From Botryllus schlosseri (Eukaryota), in assembly GCA_051294905.1 (NCBI GenBank), contig CM119374.1:18600001-18664000 (forward strand): 64,000 bases of DNA, given 5' to 3'. The notes under the pieces are model-generated. The model ran no database searches. It saw only the letters and a list, made by a program, of their open reading frames with translations, and was not told the origin of the DNA. Position 1 is the first letter of the stretch. Each line of letters begins with the position of its first letter. Below, piece by piece: positions 22,855 through 30,454 of the stretch. Both the position numbers and the translations under genes were made by a program.

Positions 22855-24443
22855 CTTGAAACTGTCCATCACGTTATGAACCAGTTGAAAGCAAAGTAAA
22901 ATGGTTGCAGACCGAACAGTGGGAAGATAGTTGGAAAAGAATAATAGATAACAGCAACAAAAATTCAACCACTTCACGATGATTGAATGTTTACCTTGCC
23001 ATAATTCAACTTACAAATTCACAGATACCTTTGAAAGATGTTTGAAGAATTCCATTACGCATGAATAGTCATAACCGTGGCAACCCGAAGCCTTCGGGAC
23101 TTCGGGCAAATGGTCGAAGCGCAGGCATAATGTTACAAAAACTGGTGGCGGCATTCCCGTCAAAAAGAGAACGAGGACGCTTCCTAGCAGCACTGTGTAA
23201 TCCCATTTTGTACCGAAACTCTGAGACTGATAGAGAGCATTGTATAGTTGGTCATGGTTAAAAGCTCAAAACCAGTAGGGCACTGTCTAACATTGACATT
23301 TGTGAAATATGTTGTAACTTGACCTACAAGAAATAATTTGGAGTCCCTTGCATGGAACAAGTATCAATATTATATAGTGCTCTGCAAGGGACTCAAAACT
23401 ATTTCTTATAAAGGCCAAGTTAAAAGGCATTGATCTAATTAATGCAAAAACAGCACTACGGTAGTAATTTTGACTCTGATGACTGCAGCCTGTAAGAGCA
23501 GGTACCGATACATACAATGTCATATTTCGGAGAGTAGGCGCAATTGGTTGGTCCACTTTTATCGGCATGATTAGAAACTCGGTATAGCAGTCAAAGTTTC
23601 AACCGCAGGCCTCTACCGAGAAAGGTTAGGCACTTCCCTAAATTTTCCGTCCATCGCCCGAAAGTGCATGGGCATCAATTCCCGTCACAAACCTATTCTG
23701 CACTTTGTTGCTTTCCTTACGCCAAACTCGGCGATTTCATTCCTAACACACCTTCATTTGACAGGCTTCCATCTACTTCTCTAATACAGGTGTCAATGTG
23801 ATCTACTAGTGCTACCGCTTAATCCAAATTTTACCGGAAGGGCTTCTTTGTTGCTAGTTTTGGGTGGTACTTTAGATATTGCGCGCTTCGATCAGTCTCC
23901 TGTATGTTAAGTATTGCTGTACGGATGGCGGAAACATTATTGCAATCTACCGCAACGGCCTCGTCATCTAAAGGTAGATTGCTGTAATCCTGAGTGGAAT
24001 TGGTGGCAACATTACACGCAATTTTCCGATTAACGCAAAACATAAACTTCATGTTGTTAATTGATTCGCTAAAAGCATTTCGACTGACTCTCATCAGTAG
24101 CAAACGTCACGCACATTATATTGCCGAAAACAACCACTGCTTCCTGTCTGGGCTGTAATGAGCTTAGACATACCTCTATGTATTGCTTGCAGGATAAGTA
24201 TTTCGGCTCTGATTGTGTTCCTTTCTTACTTCTTTCGAGTAAGAGGTACGTCAGAAAAGATGATGAGAATTCCAAGTTGAGTACAACTAATGTAATTATT
24301 GTCATTTTGCGTGTTGTTCACTGCAATTAACTTTTACAATTCTACGATCATAAGTTCACCAGATGCAGCCACACCTCATTGGTGGATTGTATACTTAAAT
24401 AGGCTATCTAGTGTAGAGGTCGAACCTGATCAAAACCCACACA

Positions 24444-25382
24444 ATGGCAGGCGGAAAAACGGACATGGAGAGGGTAGGCCTCTTTCAGGAGCAAGGCTAC
24501 ACCACAATTGGTGACCGATACCCAAAAGTGGACCCGGCAAGTCGACCTTTCAACGATGCGGCATACAAGGGCAAGAATATGCTCCCAGGAGGCAGTAAAA
24601 CACGGTCGGCATTGCAATCCGGATATTTTGAACCCCAGTTTAAGCGCATATTGGAGAAGGAAGCCTATTCCGACCCAGTTAAAATACGACGTCAGCAACG
24701 CATTAAGGAATCGAAGAAGAATGTGGGGAAAGCGTTTGTTCCGAATTCCGGTGAAAAAAAGATGGCCGGTCTCGGCAATCATTTTGGCACGTTTTCAGGA
24801 CCGGTCGGTGCGTTCAGCCCTGTTGCAAGGCCGCGCAAGTCGTACACAGCGCCGCCTCGAAATATCACCACGAACCCACCGAAAAAAGGTACTGGATTCG
24901 GCTATCTCGGTGTTACCCTCGGTAAATATCCCGATCACGCAACGGAAAGCTACGACAAAGCCAGAGATTTACGCCGTAAGGAGATTATGGCTCACAAATC
25001 GCAATTGAAAGGAGGCGCTTTTAAACTGCATCTTCACCCGGTGTCATACTTTGATCAGAATCCGTTCAAATCTGACAGGCCGTTGGGTCCGCCGAAAAAA
25101 TCAGCAGGAAAACTACCCGCAGTGAAACCGTTCAAGCCAAGCTCTCCAGCTAAGAAAATCGGGGGCTCTAAATCCGGAACCTTCGACGGATACCCGACGC
25201 ACTCCAACGACGCGTACGTGGTCAAAACTAAGAAACTACCGTCCACGAACAAGGAAGGCAAGATCTTCCATCCGTCGCCAGGTCCCAAATCGAGACCCAT
25301 CAAATCTATTCTCAATCAAAATGTCGTCAGGTCGATACACGCGGATAATTACAAAACCACGCACCAGGTGATGGCGTTTTAA
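24444..25382 (+). CDS. CFAP96: Cilia- and flagella-associated protein 96 (C4orf47/UPF0602), single-exon, 312 aa
   Basis: Uninterrupted ORF matching recalled C4orf47 along its length: GGKTDMERVGLF, RPFNDAAYKGKNMLPGGSK, TNPPKKGTGFGY, GAFKLHLHP, FKPSSPAKK, GTFDGYPTHS, KIFHPSPGPKSRP. Confidence 0.93.
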   Translation: MAGGKTDMERVGLFQEQGYTTIGDRYPKVDPASRPFNDAAYKGKNMLPGGSKTRSALQSGYFEPQFKRILEKEAYSDPVKIRRQQRIKESKKNVGKAFVPNSGEKKMAGLGNHFGTFSGPVGAFSPVARPRKSYTAPPRNITTNPPKKGTGFGYLGVTLGKYPDHATESYDKARDLRRKEIMAHKSQLKGGAFKLHLHPVSYFDQNPFKSDRPLGPPKKSAGKLPAVKPFKPSSPAKKIGGSKSGTFDGYPTHSNDAYVVKTKKLPSTNKEGKIFHPSPGPKSRPIKSILNQNVVRSIHADNYKTTHQVMAF

Positions 25383-26506
25383 ATGCGACTCTTATCACGA
25401 AACTTTCGCGATTTGTTTGCTACTTTAGCTTCCCTCAATGATGCACTCGCCGGAAAGAAAGGATGTCGACAAATTGTTCATTTTTGTTAAACTAAATTAC
25501 AACTTTAATGACAGAGCGATAATATTATCAAGACACATGGAATCAAGGCCAGTGCATATGAAATGCTTATAGGATTTACAAAGAATAGTTTTGTTCAAAT
25601 CAAATTTGATGTTCAATTCAATTCAAAGGAGCTCTCTTTGTCGAAATCGGCATGTTAATTTTCAAGCTCTTTTGTTTCCTTCGATACAAGTGCAGACTCG
25701 GGTCGAGCAGTTGCCCCTGTCAGATTGTAACTAATGTTGTGCACTTATCATGTAATATTAACGGTGTCACCTTATTGATCATGTTTTTCTATTTTACGAT
25801 AATTTCTGTTTAAAATATACAATGTACCTTTTGACTGAAAAGCTTTTGAACTGCATTTATGGGATATTAGGATGGCTTGAGTTATTACTTGAATTGGATC
25901 CATGTCATGCATACAGACTGGAATCTCATTGATAAATGGTTACGAGCTATAGCCGGACGAAACTTACTGCGGCTGAAATCGGTCAATTGTTTTAATATTG
26001 CATTGTGGGTCTTGTCTCTTATGAATTAGAACATTGAATCAAATTTGAAATGAACGAAATTGGTTGGAACGTTGAAGGCCCCAAATCATGAAATGCATTG
26101 TGCTTGTAAATTTTTGTTCATCTTTTGGCATTGATTCCATTCTAAATGCTAATATGTCAGGAAAATTGTAGCCTTTTGACAGTCTTGCAAAAATTATGTG
26201 TGGTGGCCTATCTAATAATATTCTTTTGTTGTCAAATTATCTAGAGGTTATTATATGTAATTTTGATTGCTTCTGAGCTAGTTGCAATTATTTCATTATG
26301 ATCTAACCGGTAGATATAGCCAATTGATGGTTATTTCTCAGATGTGCATGATCATGGCATTTTAAATTGAATATCAGTATGTCATGAGTATCATCAATAT
26401 TTTAGAAAATTCAATGGTGTGAGTCATTTTTATGAGACGGTGTATTCTGTTATATATTTGTCACTATTTAGCATATCTAATCATGTTGGGGTATGAATCT
26501 ATATGA

Positions 26507-29500
26507 ATGGATGCTACGATAATCGGAAAAGCTATTACGCCGATCAGTCATGAACGTCTTTTGCAACTTCCTTACTGCAATCGCGCGAACGATTGGAATA
26601 CAAAGAGAATGCCGTTGTCCAAACGCTACGCTGATTTGAAGTCTCTTCAAATATATCATGACAAAATGGATGACGGACAATTTTCAAGCCGGCACGACCC
26701 CGCGCATGAAAGGACGGTTACTAATCTATCACCTATCTTTCGTAATATGTCACTGTCGGAGACTTACAATTTTGCACGCGCGCAACTGCAGTGTATGCCA
26801 TATCAGAAACAGCGTAAGCGCACGCACACTCCAATTTTGGCATTCCCCAAAGTTAACACTATGAATAAGGAAGCGCACGATACCAATTTAGAGGTATCAA
26901 AATATAATGATATGAAGCCATCATCGCTAAGCGAAACTTTAGACAAGCCCCAAACATCGACAAGGAAAAACGCACAATTAACCCCGCTCAAAGTACAACG
27001 CCGAGCAAAAAGTGTAACGACCCACCGAAGACACCGTAAGAGCAGCACACGACGGAAAAAGAATGTCCGCGCCGTGAGTCGAAGATCGCGAAAAGAGTCA
27101 TCGAAACCCGCGAACGAAATTGCAATAACCCCGGTACGCACGAGTACATCGTTTCCTTCCAAACTGAATGCTGCTGCAGGCAACCATCGAGGTTACGAGA
27201 CTCGGTCGAGCGTCACTTCGCACAGTGGCAGACCAGGCCCTATCTACGCCAACAGAGATATTCTTCGATTTCGGCCGTCGCGGCCTTCGACGAAAAAGGA
27301 TTCTTTTGATCTTGAAGCCAACGACCCGCTGCTATCTTCACTCGGTGAGACGAAATATGCGTTGTCAAAGACGTTCTGGCAGCTAATATATCCGAATCTG
27401 TTTTAGATATGTCTACGATCAGCAAAAAGGTAAACATGTTTTCGTTTTACCTTTTTTATGCACGATTCTAACCAAGTCATCAGTCAGTTTGACTTTACAG
27501 TTTTGACTCGAGTCATGTTCCACCGAGCGAGATAGTGTAATGGTTATGCGTCCGGCTTCTCGAGCGGTAGGTCGTGGGTTCGATTCCCGGCCGGGTCATA
27601 CCAAAGACTCGAAAAATGGTATCCGCAGCTATCCTGCTAGGCGCTCAGCAATCACGGATAGCATGGAGGAGAAAAAAAACGGGGGCGCACACTAGATGAC
27701 CTCATGGGGCCGTATCGCAACTCCGTCGCCAAAGCATCTCGATGGTGCAGGCGAGAAAGAATATCATATCTCTCTCTCTCTCTCTCTCTCCACTCACTTT
27801 TTCGAAACACTTGGGTGGTATCGAAGGCCTCATAATATACTCATTTTTTTGCACTCTTAACATGTTTATTCAAACACTTGGTCGAGTCATGCACAATTAC
27901 TTGAGTACAAGTCGAGTCATTTTTCATTTTTAAGAAAATGACTCGAGTCAGGTCAAGTCAACGAAAAATTCCGACTCGATTCACTACAACCTTTTTGAAA
28001 TGCTAGACTGGAGTTTACCAATTGTTGACCGAATATTTGTTCCGTAGATGTTTTCCAATTTGCGTTGTCGGCTTCGGACAGTCTGCCACGTCCCCTAAAG
28101 AATCCGCACTCTTTCGAAACTTTACTAAAGAAATAGAAGAGGAGCATGTAGGGATTCTATTTATACCGTTAACGTTCAAGGCAGGCTCAACTGCCAGGTT
28201 TCATTTATTGTTAATCCATAACTTGGAGTCAAGGTTCCTTTGCGTATCGAAAATGACATTGCCAAAATTGGCCTCCGATAGCATAAAAGATTTGGCTGGT
28301 GTCTGCATATCTTTTAAAATTTGGAGACAGGATTATATCCAGCGCATGCACATATTACTTTCAGTTTTACAACGTTCAATGTGCAAAATATAAGTAGTGG
28401 TTAATCGATGTTAAGCAAAAGTGGTAATACTAGAATAATCACCAATACAATCAGTAGTACAATAAGGCAAAACCTCAATGAGTGCTCTGAGAAAGTGAGA
28501 GTATTTCGTTACTAAGCACCTTTGCTTGTAAACTCTGGTATGCGAGACCATCAGTGTAGTTTGTCTGCTCTTGTGGCATCTAGCTTGTACATGGATATAT
28601 TTAGTTTTGTTTCTTTTTGTTTAGTGGCATGATTTACCACTTTGACTACGTCGTATGGGAGTAATTATGGCAGCCGGAATGCGATTTCAAATTCACCATT
28701 TTTTGTAATAGGGCTCTCGAGAGCTGTCCACCCGAATCCAGTTGATCCATCGATATGGGAATGAAGATGTCATCCAGAAGCACATGGAGATGAAAAAGAA
28801 AAGAGAGATGGTTGTCAGGCTGGAAAACAGAGTTCTCGAACAGCAAGCTAACGAAAGGAAGAAGGAAAAGCAGAGGTTAAAGGTGAGAAACACAGATATT
28901 CCGGACTTATTTATGACTTTCCAGTCTCTTTTGAGATTTCAATAAAAATATTCTGGTGATAGCAAATTGTTCTTGATCAGGATTGGGTTCTCGAAGTAGC
29001 CTAAGCTAACGCATATAACAGTGTTTATGTTTCGCTACGAACCAACTATTAACATGATGTCTATGGGCTACTACAGGATGTGTCTTGGACCACCTGACTC
29101 ATGTTTTTTGGTTTTATACAGTGAATCAACTTCAAATCCATGGAAAATATGATTATGTCACAAATGCCACATAATTTCCAACATTTGAGCTCCACTCACA
29201 TTATCAGGCATTTGCTATTGGCGAAAGTTAGTCACACAGCTTTTAGTGAATGACTTAAAGCTGTTGACTTATGCAATTCTGAAATTCGTTGCTGTGAATG
29301 GCATACAGTTTTCTTTCGACGGAGATCAAGCCACACACCCATCTCATACAGCACAGCTCACACTGATTTTTCCTGAATATTCACTATAATATTGTTTGTT
29401 TGAAAATCATGTTTCAAGGTTTAGTTCTTTTAACACTCTTATTGATACACGGGTCATTTTGTGAACAACTATTCTATAATAATGAATTAGATGTTTATGC

Positions 29501-29934
29501 TGTAGGCTTGTGATTCACCTAAAATTTGGGGTGCACCGATGGCTTGGAACCACTGCTTTCGAGTGAATGGAAGTTGTATCATATGTGGATAATGTTACAC
29601 AACAATGGCTCGCTGCACAATTCAGATATAACCTACCATTATTTCGATGTACGAAATCAGATTCTTCTGTTCAATACAATTGAACTAAGGCTTGTTATCA
29701 GGTGTCACTGTGTTGCGGGAACAATGGACCAACACTGACCTATACCAGACAATAATAAAGTAATTGTTGGCGTGTGGCCCTCCTGGTGTTTATTATAGAG
29801 CAATGTGCACAATTGCCTACCTGTGTCTTATCACAATGTCCTGATAATGTAATTTGTTGCAGATCTATGCACTTAACAAATTGATGACAAAGTTGGAGCT
29901 TGAACAATTTGAAGAATTCAAGAGGAGCTTATAA
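26507..29934 (+). CDS. Uncharacterised ~389-aa protein: basic disordered N-terminus plus C-terminal SVBP/CCDC23-like helix (5-exon model)
   Basis: Exons 26507-27344 (G|gtgaga), 27407-27429 (ttttag|AT ATG TCT...AAG|gtaaac), 28082-28147, 28712-28882 and 29863-29934; 1170 nt, phase-consistent. The C-terminus ERKKEKQRLK|IYALNKLMTKLELEQFEEFKRSL* resembles SVBP [32 protein letters not shown]. Linkage of exon 1 and the identity of exon 3 are inferred. Confidence 0.65.
27470..27990. repeat. Degenerate GACTCGAGTC-motif MITE, interrupted by the SINE
   Basis: Several GACTCGAGTC(A) motifs on both sides of the SINE; the same motif family occurs at 61602-62130 and ~63137-63350. Ends are not defined. Confidence 0.5.
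27522..27790 (+). mobile_element. tRNA-derived SINE (Pol III A and B boxes, conserved central domain, (CT)n tail)
   Basis: A box TAGTGTAATGG, B box GGTTCGATTCC, then GGGTCATACCAAAGACTCGAAAAATGGTATCCGCAGCTATCCTGCTAGGCGCTCAGCA (resembles the recalled Meta-type SINE core), and a CT tail. It sits in intron 2 of the SVBP-like model, inside a GACTCGAGTC-rich repeat. Confidence 0.85.
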
Positions 29935-30454
29935 AGTCGTTTTTTGCCTACATACTTCACTTGCCGCTATCTATGAGATTGTATCTGAAATGATTACCTA
30001 CAAGTACATTGTATGACTACATATGAGAGAATGGTCATCTTTGTCTGGATATCGAATGTTGCACAAAGGGATTGTTGCAGTTATGCAGAAACATACGTTT
30101 TTAAGGAAAATTATACAAGCACTTAGCTGCTGCCAACAGGCACTCAACGTATATTGGAAAATTTACTGGAGCTTGAGTCATTCAACATTTTGACCTCCTT
30201 GTAAGTTATGAGCACATTGAAGCAGTCCTGATTAAAAAAAAAACAGAATTTGATTATTCTAGTAATTCTTTGACTCGCCATTGTTGCCTTTTGTGAAATG
30301 TTCATTCCACATCGGATATTTCGATATACCACACGACACATAATCATTCACACATATCCTACAAGCTTTTTATTAACATTTGAATGTATCGAATACCATA
30401 ATAAAGCGACGAAAGCACTACAATAAAATATAAGATTGCAAAATTTTCATGCCA

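What the first reader, a model, noticed from the sequence alone, without database searches (positions are those of the whole stretch)
26507..29934. SVBP-like helix at the end of a ~389-aa basic, disordered protein next to a ciliary gene
Seen: the last two exons give QQANERKKEKQRLKIYALNKLMTKLELEQFEEFKRSL, strikingly like the vasohibin-binding helix of SVBP ([19 protein letters not shown]). The apparent 299-aa single ORF at 26507 hides a 62-nt intron (27345-27406) that links it in frame through MSTISKK to these exons. The N-terminal part has a Lys/Arg/Ser-rich tract (RRHRKSSTRRKKNVRAVSRRSRK). Known: vertebrate SVBP is only ~66 aa and is the chaperone/activator of VASH1/2 tubulin detyrosinases. 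Inference: an extended SVBP-family protein whose basic tail could tether the detyrosinase to acidic tubulin tails or axonemes. An internal ATG (27409) could also give a ~109-aa short form. Tandem position behind CFAP96 hints at a ciliary or sperm role.
Basis: partly seen in the sequence, partly recalled or inferred. Interest (0 to 1): 0.75.

Follow-up and report, generated by a model that had tools for sequence, protein, structure and literature searches.

The report
Long-form SVBP with disordered N-terminal extension
This animal's only homologue of SVBP, the small helper protein of the tubulin-detyrosinating enzyme vasohibin, is made as the tail end of a 367-residue, mostly disordered, very basic protein; RNA data and a distant relative both show the fusion is real, but what the extra part does is untested.

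Summary
The gene is real and the fusion holds, with one correction. RNA contigs from three studies and raw RNA-seq reads join 26470-27344 | 27407-27429 | 28712-28882 | 29863-about 30420, all at GT..AG.

The C-terminal 56 aa pass Pfam CCDC23/SVBP (30 bits, cut-off 27). All 13 PDB matches are SVBP, aligned to human residues 8-59.

A genomic contig of a distant relative (40% identity in exon 1, synonymous sites saturated) has the same four exons. These include the 23-nt frame-restoring microexon and an open 369-aa frame.

The best conserved stretch (21 of 24 residues) lies upstream of any shared internal ATG, so the long protein is the product.

The genome holds no second SVBP. It holds one vasohibin locus with the Cys, His and Ser motifs in place.

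The N-terminal 279 aa are predicted disordered (pLDDT 46) and basic (pI 11.4 for residues 101-279). They carry conserved short motifs and have only three relatives in billions of proteins.

Microtubule tethering is a reasonable inference by analogy with the basic tails of VASH1/2, but it is untested. The ciliary link rests on gene adjacency alone. The short form from ATG 27409 is not conserved.

I rate this a new variant of a known kind, of moderate interest.

The parts
26470..26506 (+). 5' leader of the mRNA, about 37-42 nt, with three upstream ATGs (26483, 26493, 26503). All are out of frame with the main ATG and open short uORFs.
   Evidence: RNA contigs begin at 26465-26470. The ATGs were read from the sequence. 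The relative L007 has a similar pair of upstream ATGs just before its start codon.
26507..27344 (+). Exon 1 coding part: 279 codons plus 1 base (phase 1). It encodes the disordered, basic N-terminal extension with conserved motifs at residues 1-22, 41-51, 73-94, 162-185, 207-221 and 273-278.
   Evidence: ORF. RNA contigs and the donor at 27344. Three relatives share the donor position. SNPs are 13 synonymous to 8 non-synonymous, against 23% synonymous expected, p = 1.7e-4. AF2 mean pLDDT is 45.7, with one helix at residues 83-96.
27345..27406 (+). Intron 1, 62 nt, GT..AG. If retained it would end the frame at the apparent 299-aa ORF.
   Evidence: Joint 27344>27407 in contigs of X1, X4 and X9 and in 2 raw reads of X23. 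The L007 intron is 60 nt.
27407..27429 (+). 23-nt microexon (with the last base of exon 1 it encodes D-MSTISKK). It restores phase 0, so the SVBP module is in frame only when it is included.
   Evidence: Both joints are seen in three RNA contigs. L007 has a 23-nt microexon at the same place with a different sequence (D-ASPNKRK) and no ATG.
27430..28711 (+). Intron 2, 1282 nt. It holds a young, abundant SINE-like repeat at about 27520-27795.
   Evidence: Joint 27429>28712 and zero depth at 28000-28199. The repeat has at least 2754 candidate copies, the 40 scored being mostly 98-100% identical.
28712..28882 (+). Exon 3, 57 codons. The first 24 residues are a highly conserved segment with no counterpart in vertebrate SVBP. 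The rest is the basic N-terminal half of the SVBP module.
   Evidence: Translation. 77% identity to L007 overall and 87.5% in the first 24 residues. The part from residue 25 aligns to human SVBP from residue 8.
28883..29862 (+). Intron 3, 980 nt, GT..AG. It splits the SVBP helix between ...QRLK and IYALN...
   Evidence: Joint seen in three contigs and in 4 raw reads of X23.
29863..29934 (+). Exon 4 coding part: 23 codons plus the stop. This is the core of the vasohibin-binding helix (IYALN...FEEF).
   Evidence: Translation. Pfam CCDC23 25.8 bits on its own. 14 of 19 residues are identical to human SVBP 39-57, and the Leu matching human L49 is kept.
29935..30420 (+). 3' UTR, about 490 nt, with AATAAA at 30400 and 30422.
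   Evidence: The X1 contig (1620 nt) runs past 30390. Poly(A) signals located.

Best explanation
One four-exon gene (CDS 26507-29934, + strand) gives one mRNA of about 1.6 kb encoding a 367-aa protein.

Shown: the C-terminal 56 or so residues are the species' only SVBP module, the single helix that in vertebrates slots into vasohibin, keeps it soluble and makes it active as a tubulin detyrosinase. In front of it sit a 24-residue conserved segment, a microexon-encoded linker and a 279-residue N-terminal region. That region is predicted disordered, is strongly basic and carries a handful of conserved short motifs. It is found only in a narrow lineage.

Inferred, likely: the C-terminal helix binds and activates the genome's single vasohibin.

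Inferred, more tentative: the N-terminal region adds a second function in trans. The most likely one is electrostatic attachment to the acidic microtubule surface or tubulin tails, tuning residence time, with the conserved motifs recruiting or regulating partners. This would be the job that the disordered basic flanks of VASH1/2 themselves do in vertebrates.
For: RNA:
- Contigs from three separate studies carry all three splice joints on one molecule. A true RNA-seq run supports two of them.
- The X1 contig (1620 nt) matches the predicted mRNA from leader to poly(A) signal.

Family:
- Pfam CCDC23 at 30.0 bits against a 27-bit cut-off.
- All 13 PDB matches are SVBP, best E 3.5e-8, covering human residues 8-59.

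Conservation:
- L007, from a species with saturated synonymous sites (pS 0.8-1.0), keeps the same exon sizes (23, 171 and 72 nt) and phases and an open 369-aa frame.
- pN is 0.28 for residues 1-100, 0.47 for residues 101-279 and 0.16 for exons 2-4.
- The best conserved 24 residues lie upstream of the first shared internal Met.
- Within the species, SNPs favour synonymous changes, p = 1.7e-4.

Genome:
- A single SVBP locus.
- One vasohibin locus with the helix alpha1-alpha2 region and the PIKCLEAV, YYHIVLG and MGISRR motifs.

N-terminal region:
- Predicted disordered. pI is 11.4 for residues 101-279, with net charge +14 in residues 166-195.
- The basic patch is conserved in all four sequences.

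Analogy: the basic disordered flanks of VASH1/2 lengthen microtubule residence time (PMC9750192). SVBP residues 26-60 form the ordered helix that binds vasohibin (PMC6642083).
Against: - There is no protein-level evidence for the long form: no peptides and no ribosome profiling.
- Three upstream ATGs sit in a leader of about 40 nt and could lower initiation at 26507.
- Binding to vasohibin is inferred from homology only. No complex model was run.
- Nothing tested here bears on microtubule binding by the N-terminal region. The basic patch would also fit a bipartite nuclear localisation signal.
- I could not check whether long SVBPs are common in other invertebrate phyla, so 'unusual' is relative to vertebrates and to the literature I could search.
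Confidence: 0.75

Rival explanations
1. Only a short, vertebrate-like SVBP of about 56 aa (starting at the Met-Glu-Met in exon 3) is made. The upstream 279-codon frame would be a long translated or untranslated leader with no function as protein.
For: The Met at 28784 aligns near the start of human SVBP and is kept in L007. Three upstream ATGs crowd the leader, so initiation at 26507 may be leaky.
Against: With synonymous sites saturated, an unconstrained 279-codon frame would not stay open in four sequences that share one donor position. SNPs are biased to synonymous changes. The 24 residues just upstream of that Met are the best conserved part of the protein, 87.5% identical. A 23-nt microexon that exists only to restore the frame is conserved. 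Depth over the 3' exons is no higher than over exon 1.
Confidence: 0.07
2. This is a read-through chimera of two neighbouring genes, an orphan gene (exon 1) and a separate SVBP gene. The separate transcripts would be the functional ones.
For: The N-terminal region has no relatives outside a narrow lineage, as expected for an orphan gene. Intron 2 is long enough to hold a promoter. X1 has faint contigs (depth about 3) inside intron 2 at 28193-28660.
Against: All three contigs that cover the junctions are joined, and none ends after exon 1 or starts before exon 3 with another 5' exon. The intronic contigs show no joint to exon 3, and their depth is about 3 against 21.5. The same joined and phase-matched layout is kept in L007, where intron 2 is only 365 nt.
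Confidence: 0.06
3. The long protein is real, but the N-terminal region does not tether to microtubules. It might instead direct nuclear import, control stability, or act as a phospho-regulated docking site. It might also give the protein a job unrelated to vasohibin.
For: The conserved basic patch (residues 162-185) fits a bipartite NLS pattern as well as a microtubule-binding patch. An R-x-x-x-S-x-P site at residue 211 is shared by two of the species. The strongest conservation lies in non-basic motifs at residues 1-22 and 73-94, which electrostatics does not explain.
Against: None directly. The preference for tethering rests only on analogy with the VASH1/2 flanks and on the net positive charge.
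Confidence: 0.3

Closest known systems
Vertebrate SVBP (CCDC23, Pfam PF15674; for example PDB 6J4O, 6JZC, 6NVQ chain B or C)
   Same: The C-terminal 56 residues align to human SVBP residues 8-59. Of the 19 core helix residues, 14 are identical, including the Leu matching human L49, whose change to Pro causes disease (PMC11709099, abstract). Both have a basic stretch before the helix. A vasohibin partner is present in the genome.
   Different: This protein is 367 aa against 66 aa. About 311 extra N-terminal residues include a 24-residue segment that is more conserved than the SVBP module itself. The coding region is spread over four exons with an obligatory 23-nt microexon.
Disordered basic N- and C-terminal flanks of VASH1/VASH2 (PMC9750192)
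   Same: Both are disordered, positively charged regions attached to the detyrosinase complex. In vertebrates these flanks set the residence time on microtubules and the pattern of detyrosination.
   Different: Here the region sits on the SVBP subunit rather than on the enzyme. No microtubule binding has been measured. It also carries conserved non-basic motifs with no counterpart in the VASH flanks.

Membership tests
SVBP / CCDC23 (PF15674) | Match to the family profile above the curated cut-off | tested here: met
   30.0 bits against a 27-bit cut-off, E 5.3e-7, profile positions 5-54 of 63, for the spliced 56-aa C-terminus. Exon 4 alone scores 25.8 bits.
SVBP / CCDC23 (PF15674) | Nearest solved relatives are SVBP and nothing else | tested here: met
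   All 13 PDB sequences with E up to 1 are small vasohibin-binding protein, best E 3.5e-8.
SVBP / CCDC23 (PF15674) | Conserved vasohibin-binding helix (human residues 26-60, core IYALN...FDEF) | tested here: met
   The alignment gives 14 of 19 identical residues over human 39-57, with the equivalent of L49 kept. The ordered helix is residues 26-60 according to PMC6642083.
SVBP / CCDC23 (PF15674) | Small size: a protein of about 60-70 aa that is little more than the helix | tested here: not met
   The RNA-supported CDS encodes 367 aa, and the relative encodes 369 aa. This is a descriptive trait of the vertebrate proteins, not a functional requirement.
SVBP / CCDC23 (PF15674) | A vasohibin partner is encoded in the same genome | tested here: met
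   One locus at G000:C6:17884557-17887079. Pfam Vasohibin exon hits reach 78.7 bits. The Cys, His and Ser motifs are present. PDB matches to VASH1/2 cover the SVBP-binding alpha1-alpha2 region and the catalytic sheet.
SVBP / CCDC23 (PF15674) | Physical binding to vasohibin, making it soluble and active | not tested
   No complex model was run. Both proteins exist here only as spliced products, which complex prediction does not accept as unaltered session sequences. A biochemical test is needed.

The most novel reading that the evidence does not exclude
In this lineage the sole SVBP is a two-part protein. The C-terminal helix switches vasohibin on. A conserved, disordered N-terminal region supplies in trans the microtubule-residence and targeting functions that vertebrate VASH1/2 carry on their own flanks. 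Where and how tubulin is detyrosinated would then be set by the 'helper' subunit. The frame-restoring 23-nt microexon could act as an on/off switch for making an SVBP-competent protein.
Probability: 0.25. Interest if true: 0.6.

Novelty: new variant of a known kind. Interest (0 to 1): 0.45.

Why it matters
SVBP is treated in the field as a minimal 66-residue chaperone helix. All known tuning of where vasohibins act is ascribed to the enzymes' own disordered flanks. A natural SVBP with about 300 extra conserved residues, which is the only SVBP in its genome, suggests the helper subunit can also carry targeting or regulatory information. It also offers a ready-made comparison (full length against the C-terminal module) for testing how disordered basic regions shape detyrosination patterns. 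The practical gain is a corrected gene model: the 299-aa 'single ORF' is an artefact of a retained 62-nt intron.

Tried and rejected
No RNA depth there and a direct 27429>28712 joint.
- Short form from ATG 27409: not conserved. The L007 microexon has no ATG.
- Second SVBP locus: none found by the Pfam profile or by protein search of the whole genome. The weak C3 hit (16.4 bits) reads as chance.
- Paralogue of the N-terminal exon in this genome: none.
- Homology of the N-terminal region: nothing in Pfam, nothing in a PDB profile search, and no ESM Atlas hit reaching 0.9 (best 0.80; the CIMIP4/TEX33 hit at 0.77 is a lead only).
- An exhaustive profile search of 1.84 billion representatives found only the two related clusters.
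- A word-index search with the 80-aa C-terminus found only the L007 exon.
- Atlas look-alikes of exon 3 (CFAP141, RIB43A, TPH, scores 0.88-0.92) are charged-helix proteins. The tool itself flags the family as probably wrong. They are not used as evidence.
- The tRNA-like head of the intronic repeat: ARAGORN and Rfam found nothing.
- Literature: no paper found on extended or invertebrate SVBP.
- Complex prediction was not run, because spliced proteins are not unaltered session sequences.
- The bacterial promoter and terminator scan was irrelevant to a eukaryotic gene.
- The organism stayed unnamed. The cluster look-up returned no source names.

Full report
**What is there**

The window is animal DNA. 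It lies at G000:C4:18600001-18664000 of a 495-Mb assembly. On the + strand, a 299-codon ORF starts at 26507.

Exon 4 alone scores 25.8 bits against Pfam CCDC23/SVBP. The spliced 56-residue C-terminus scores 30.0 bits, above the 27-bit cut-off.

A search of all PDB chains with the 80 residues of exons 3 and 4 returned 13 sequences, every one of them SVBP. The best E-value was 3.5e-8, and the alignment covers human residues 8-59. In the helix core, 14 of 19 residues are identical to human 39-57. The Leu that matches human L49 is kept; its change to Pro causes disease (PMC11709099, listed). Residues 26-60 of SVBP form the ordered, vasohibin-bound helix (PMC6642083).

**Is the long protein real?**

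I laid four runs on 24400-30390. Contigs from three different studies each carry the same chain on a single molecule. The exons are 26470-27344, 27407-27429, 28712-28882 and 29863 onward. The skipped parts are 62, 1282 and 980 nt, all GT..AG. Raw reads of a true RNA-seq run support the first joint (2 reads) and the third (4 reads).

No second copy of the N-terminal exon or of the SVBP exons exists in the genome. The spliced contigs therefore cannot come from a retrocopy.

The X1 contig is 1620 nt. It spans from about 37 nt before the ATG to the AATAAA signals at 30400 and 30422, so it is close to a full mRNA.

Depth there is zero in all four runs, and the joint goes straight from 27429 to 28712. 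The CDS is 1104 nt and the protein 367 aa, with pI 10.4.

CFAP96 (24444-25382, Pfam E 9.5e-110) is a separate gene. No run has any depth from 25400 to 26199.

**Conservation**

The 279-residue exon 1 has only three relatives in the protein collections: P0001 (87% identity), P0004 (45%) and P0002 (40%). All are ORFs called on genomic contigs. All four end at the same ...LLSS(L/F)-G|GT donor.

The contig that holds P0002 (L007) shows the whole gene:

| Feature | Window | L007 |
|---|---|---|
| Exon 1 phase | 1 | 1 |
| Intron 1 | 62 nt | 60 nt |
| Microexon | 23 nt | 23 nt |
| Exon 3 | 171 nt | 171 nt |
| Exon 4 (with stop) | 72 nt | 72 nt |
| Spliced protein | 367 aa | 369 aa |

Between the two species the synonymous sites are saturated (pS 0.8-1.0). 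Non-synonymous differences are 0.28 for residues 1-100, 0.47 for residues 101-279 and 0.16 for exons 2-4.

Within the species, 21 listed differences between the RNA contigs and the window in exon 1 split 13 synonymous to 8 non-synonymous. Random change would give 23% synonymous; binomial p = 1.7e-4. In CFAP96 all 11 listed differences are synonymous. The extension is therefore less constrained than a typical structural protein, but it is clearly coding.

The most telling point is the first 24 residues of exon 3. They lie upstream of the part that aligns to human SVBP, and they are the best conserved stretch of the whole protein (21 of 24 identical, pN 0.08). The window has no in-frame ATG between the microexon and that stretch. 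The relative has none in its microexon. Only initiation in exon 1 explains translation of this segment in both species. This argues against the short-form rival and against a read-through chimera.

**Nature of the extension**

AlphaFold2 with the four-sequence alignment gives mean pLDDT 45.7. One confident helix lies at residues 83-96, inside the most conserved motif.

Residues 101-279 have pI 11.4, and residues 166-195 carry net charge +14. The core of this patch (KVQxRxKSV ... RRK) is kept in all four sequences.

Other conserved islands are residues 1-22, 41-51, 73-94, 207-221 and 273-278.

No family, solved structure or Atlas cluster matches the region. It looks like a lineage-restricted disordered region that carries short linear motifs.

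**The partner**

The genome has one vasohibin locus, at C6:17884557-17887079. Reading its exons shows the PIKCLEAV, YYHIVLG and MGISRR motifs, which hold the catalytic Cys, His and Ser.

Its exons match VASH1/2 structures over the alpha1-alpha2 region that wraps SVBP and over the catalytic sheet.

The first coding exon seen puts only about 22 residues before the core. That would be a much shorter N-terminal flank than in human VASH1/2, but I had no RNA evidence for this gene and upstream exons may exist.

**How it most likely works**

Shown: one mRNA, one 367-aa frame under selection, a bona fide SVBP module at its end, no other SVBP in the genome, and a vasohibin present.

Inferred from homology: the C-terminal helix binds, stabilises and activates vasohibin.

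Inferred by analogy: the basic disordered region holds the complex on the acidic microtubule surface, as the basic flanks of VASH1/2 do (PMC9750192). The conserved non-basic motifs would dock other partners or be regulated.

The patch fits a nuclear localisation signal equally well, so this last step carries perhaps one chance in three.

Because exon 1 ends in phase 1, skipping the 23-nt microexon would throw the SVBP module out of frame. No skipped form was seen.

**The ciliary idea**

It rests on adjacency to CFAP96 alone.

Two other contigs, those carrying P0001 and P0004, also have a 278-aa gene just upstream.

Run X1 holds the long SVBP transcript at depth 21 with no CFAP96 contig. Contigs show presence, not absence, so this neither supports nor excludes a ciliary role.

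**Limits**

- There is no protein-level evidence for the long form.
- No complex model was run, because the tool does not take spliced proteins.
- I could not survey other phyla for long SVBPs.
- My literature searches found nothing on extended SVBPs. 'New variant' is judged against vertebrate SVBP and that literature.

Noticed in passing
window 27520-27795 (inside intron 2): A SINE-like repeat of about 270 bp with a tRNA-like head and a (CT)n tail. The genome has at least 2754 candidate copies, and the 40 scored are mostly 98-100% identical, so the family is very young. It is heavily represented in RNA (contig depth in the thousands). ARAGORN and Rfam do not call it. Some RNA reads skip 62 nt (27566-27627), probably a variant copy elsewhere in the genome.
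   Followed up: partly
window 24444-25382 and G000:C6:5576126-5576983: The genome has two CFAP96 genes. Both read as single uninterrupted ORFs (368 and 347 bits against PF15239). Whether one is a retrocopy of the other was not examined.
   Followed up: no
window 26483-26509; L007 503-529: Three out-of-frame upstream ATGs lie within about 25 nt before the main start codon, in a leader of about 40 nt. The last overlaps the start as ATGAATGG. The distant relative has a similar pair (ATGAAATGG). This may be conserved translational control.
   Followed up: no
G000:C6:17884557-17887079 (loci L003-L006): This is the single vasohibin locus, with very short introns (about 30-50 nt) between the core exons. 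The first coding exon seen has only about 22 residues before the core. A possible last exon ends in a short Arg-rich tail. The gene model has not been checked against RNA.
   Followed up: partly
Logan sample SRR25569784 (contigs of P0001 and P0004): One sample yields two versions of the N-terminal exon, 87% and 45% identical to the window's, each about 1.3-1.6 kb behind a 278-aa gene. The window's own genome has one copy, so the sample probably mixes two species. No DNA could be fetched.
   Followed up: no
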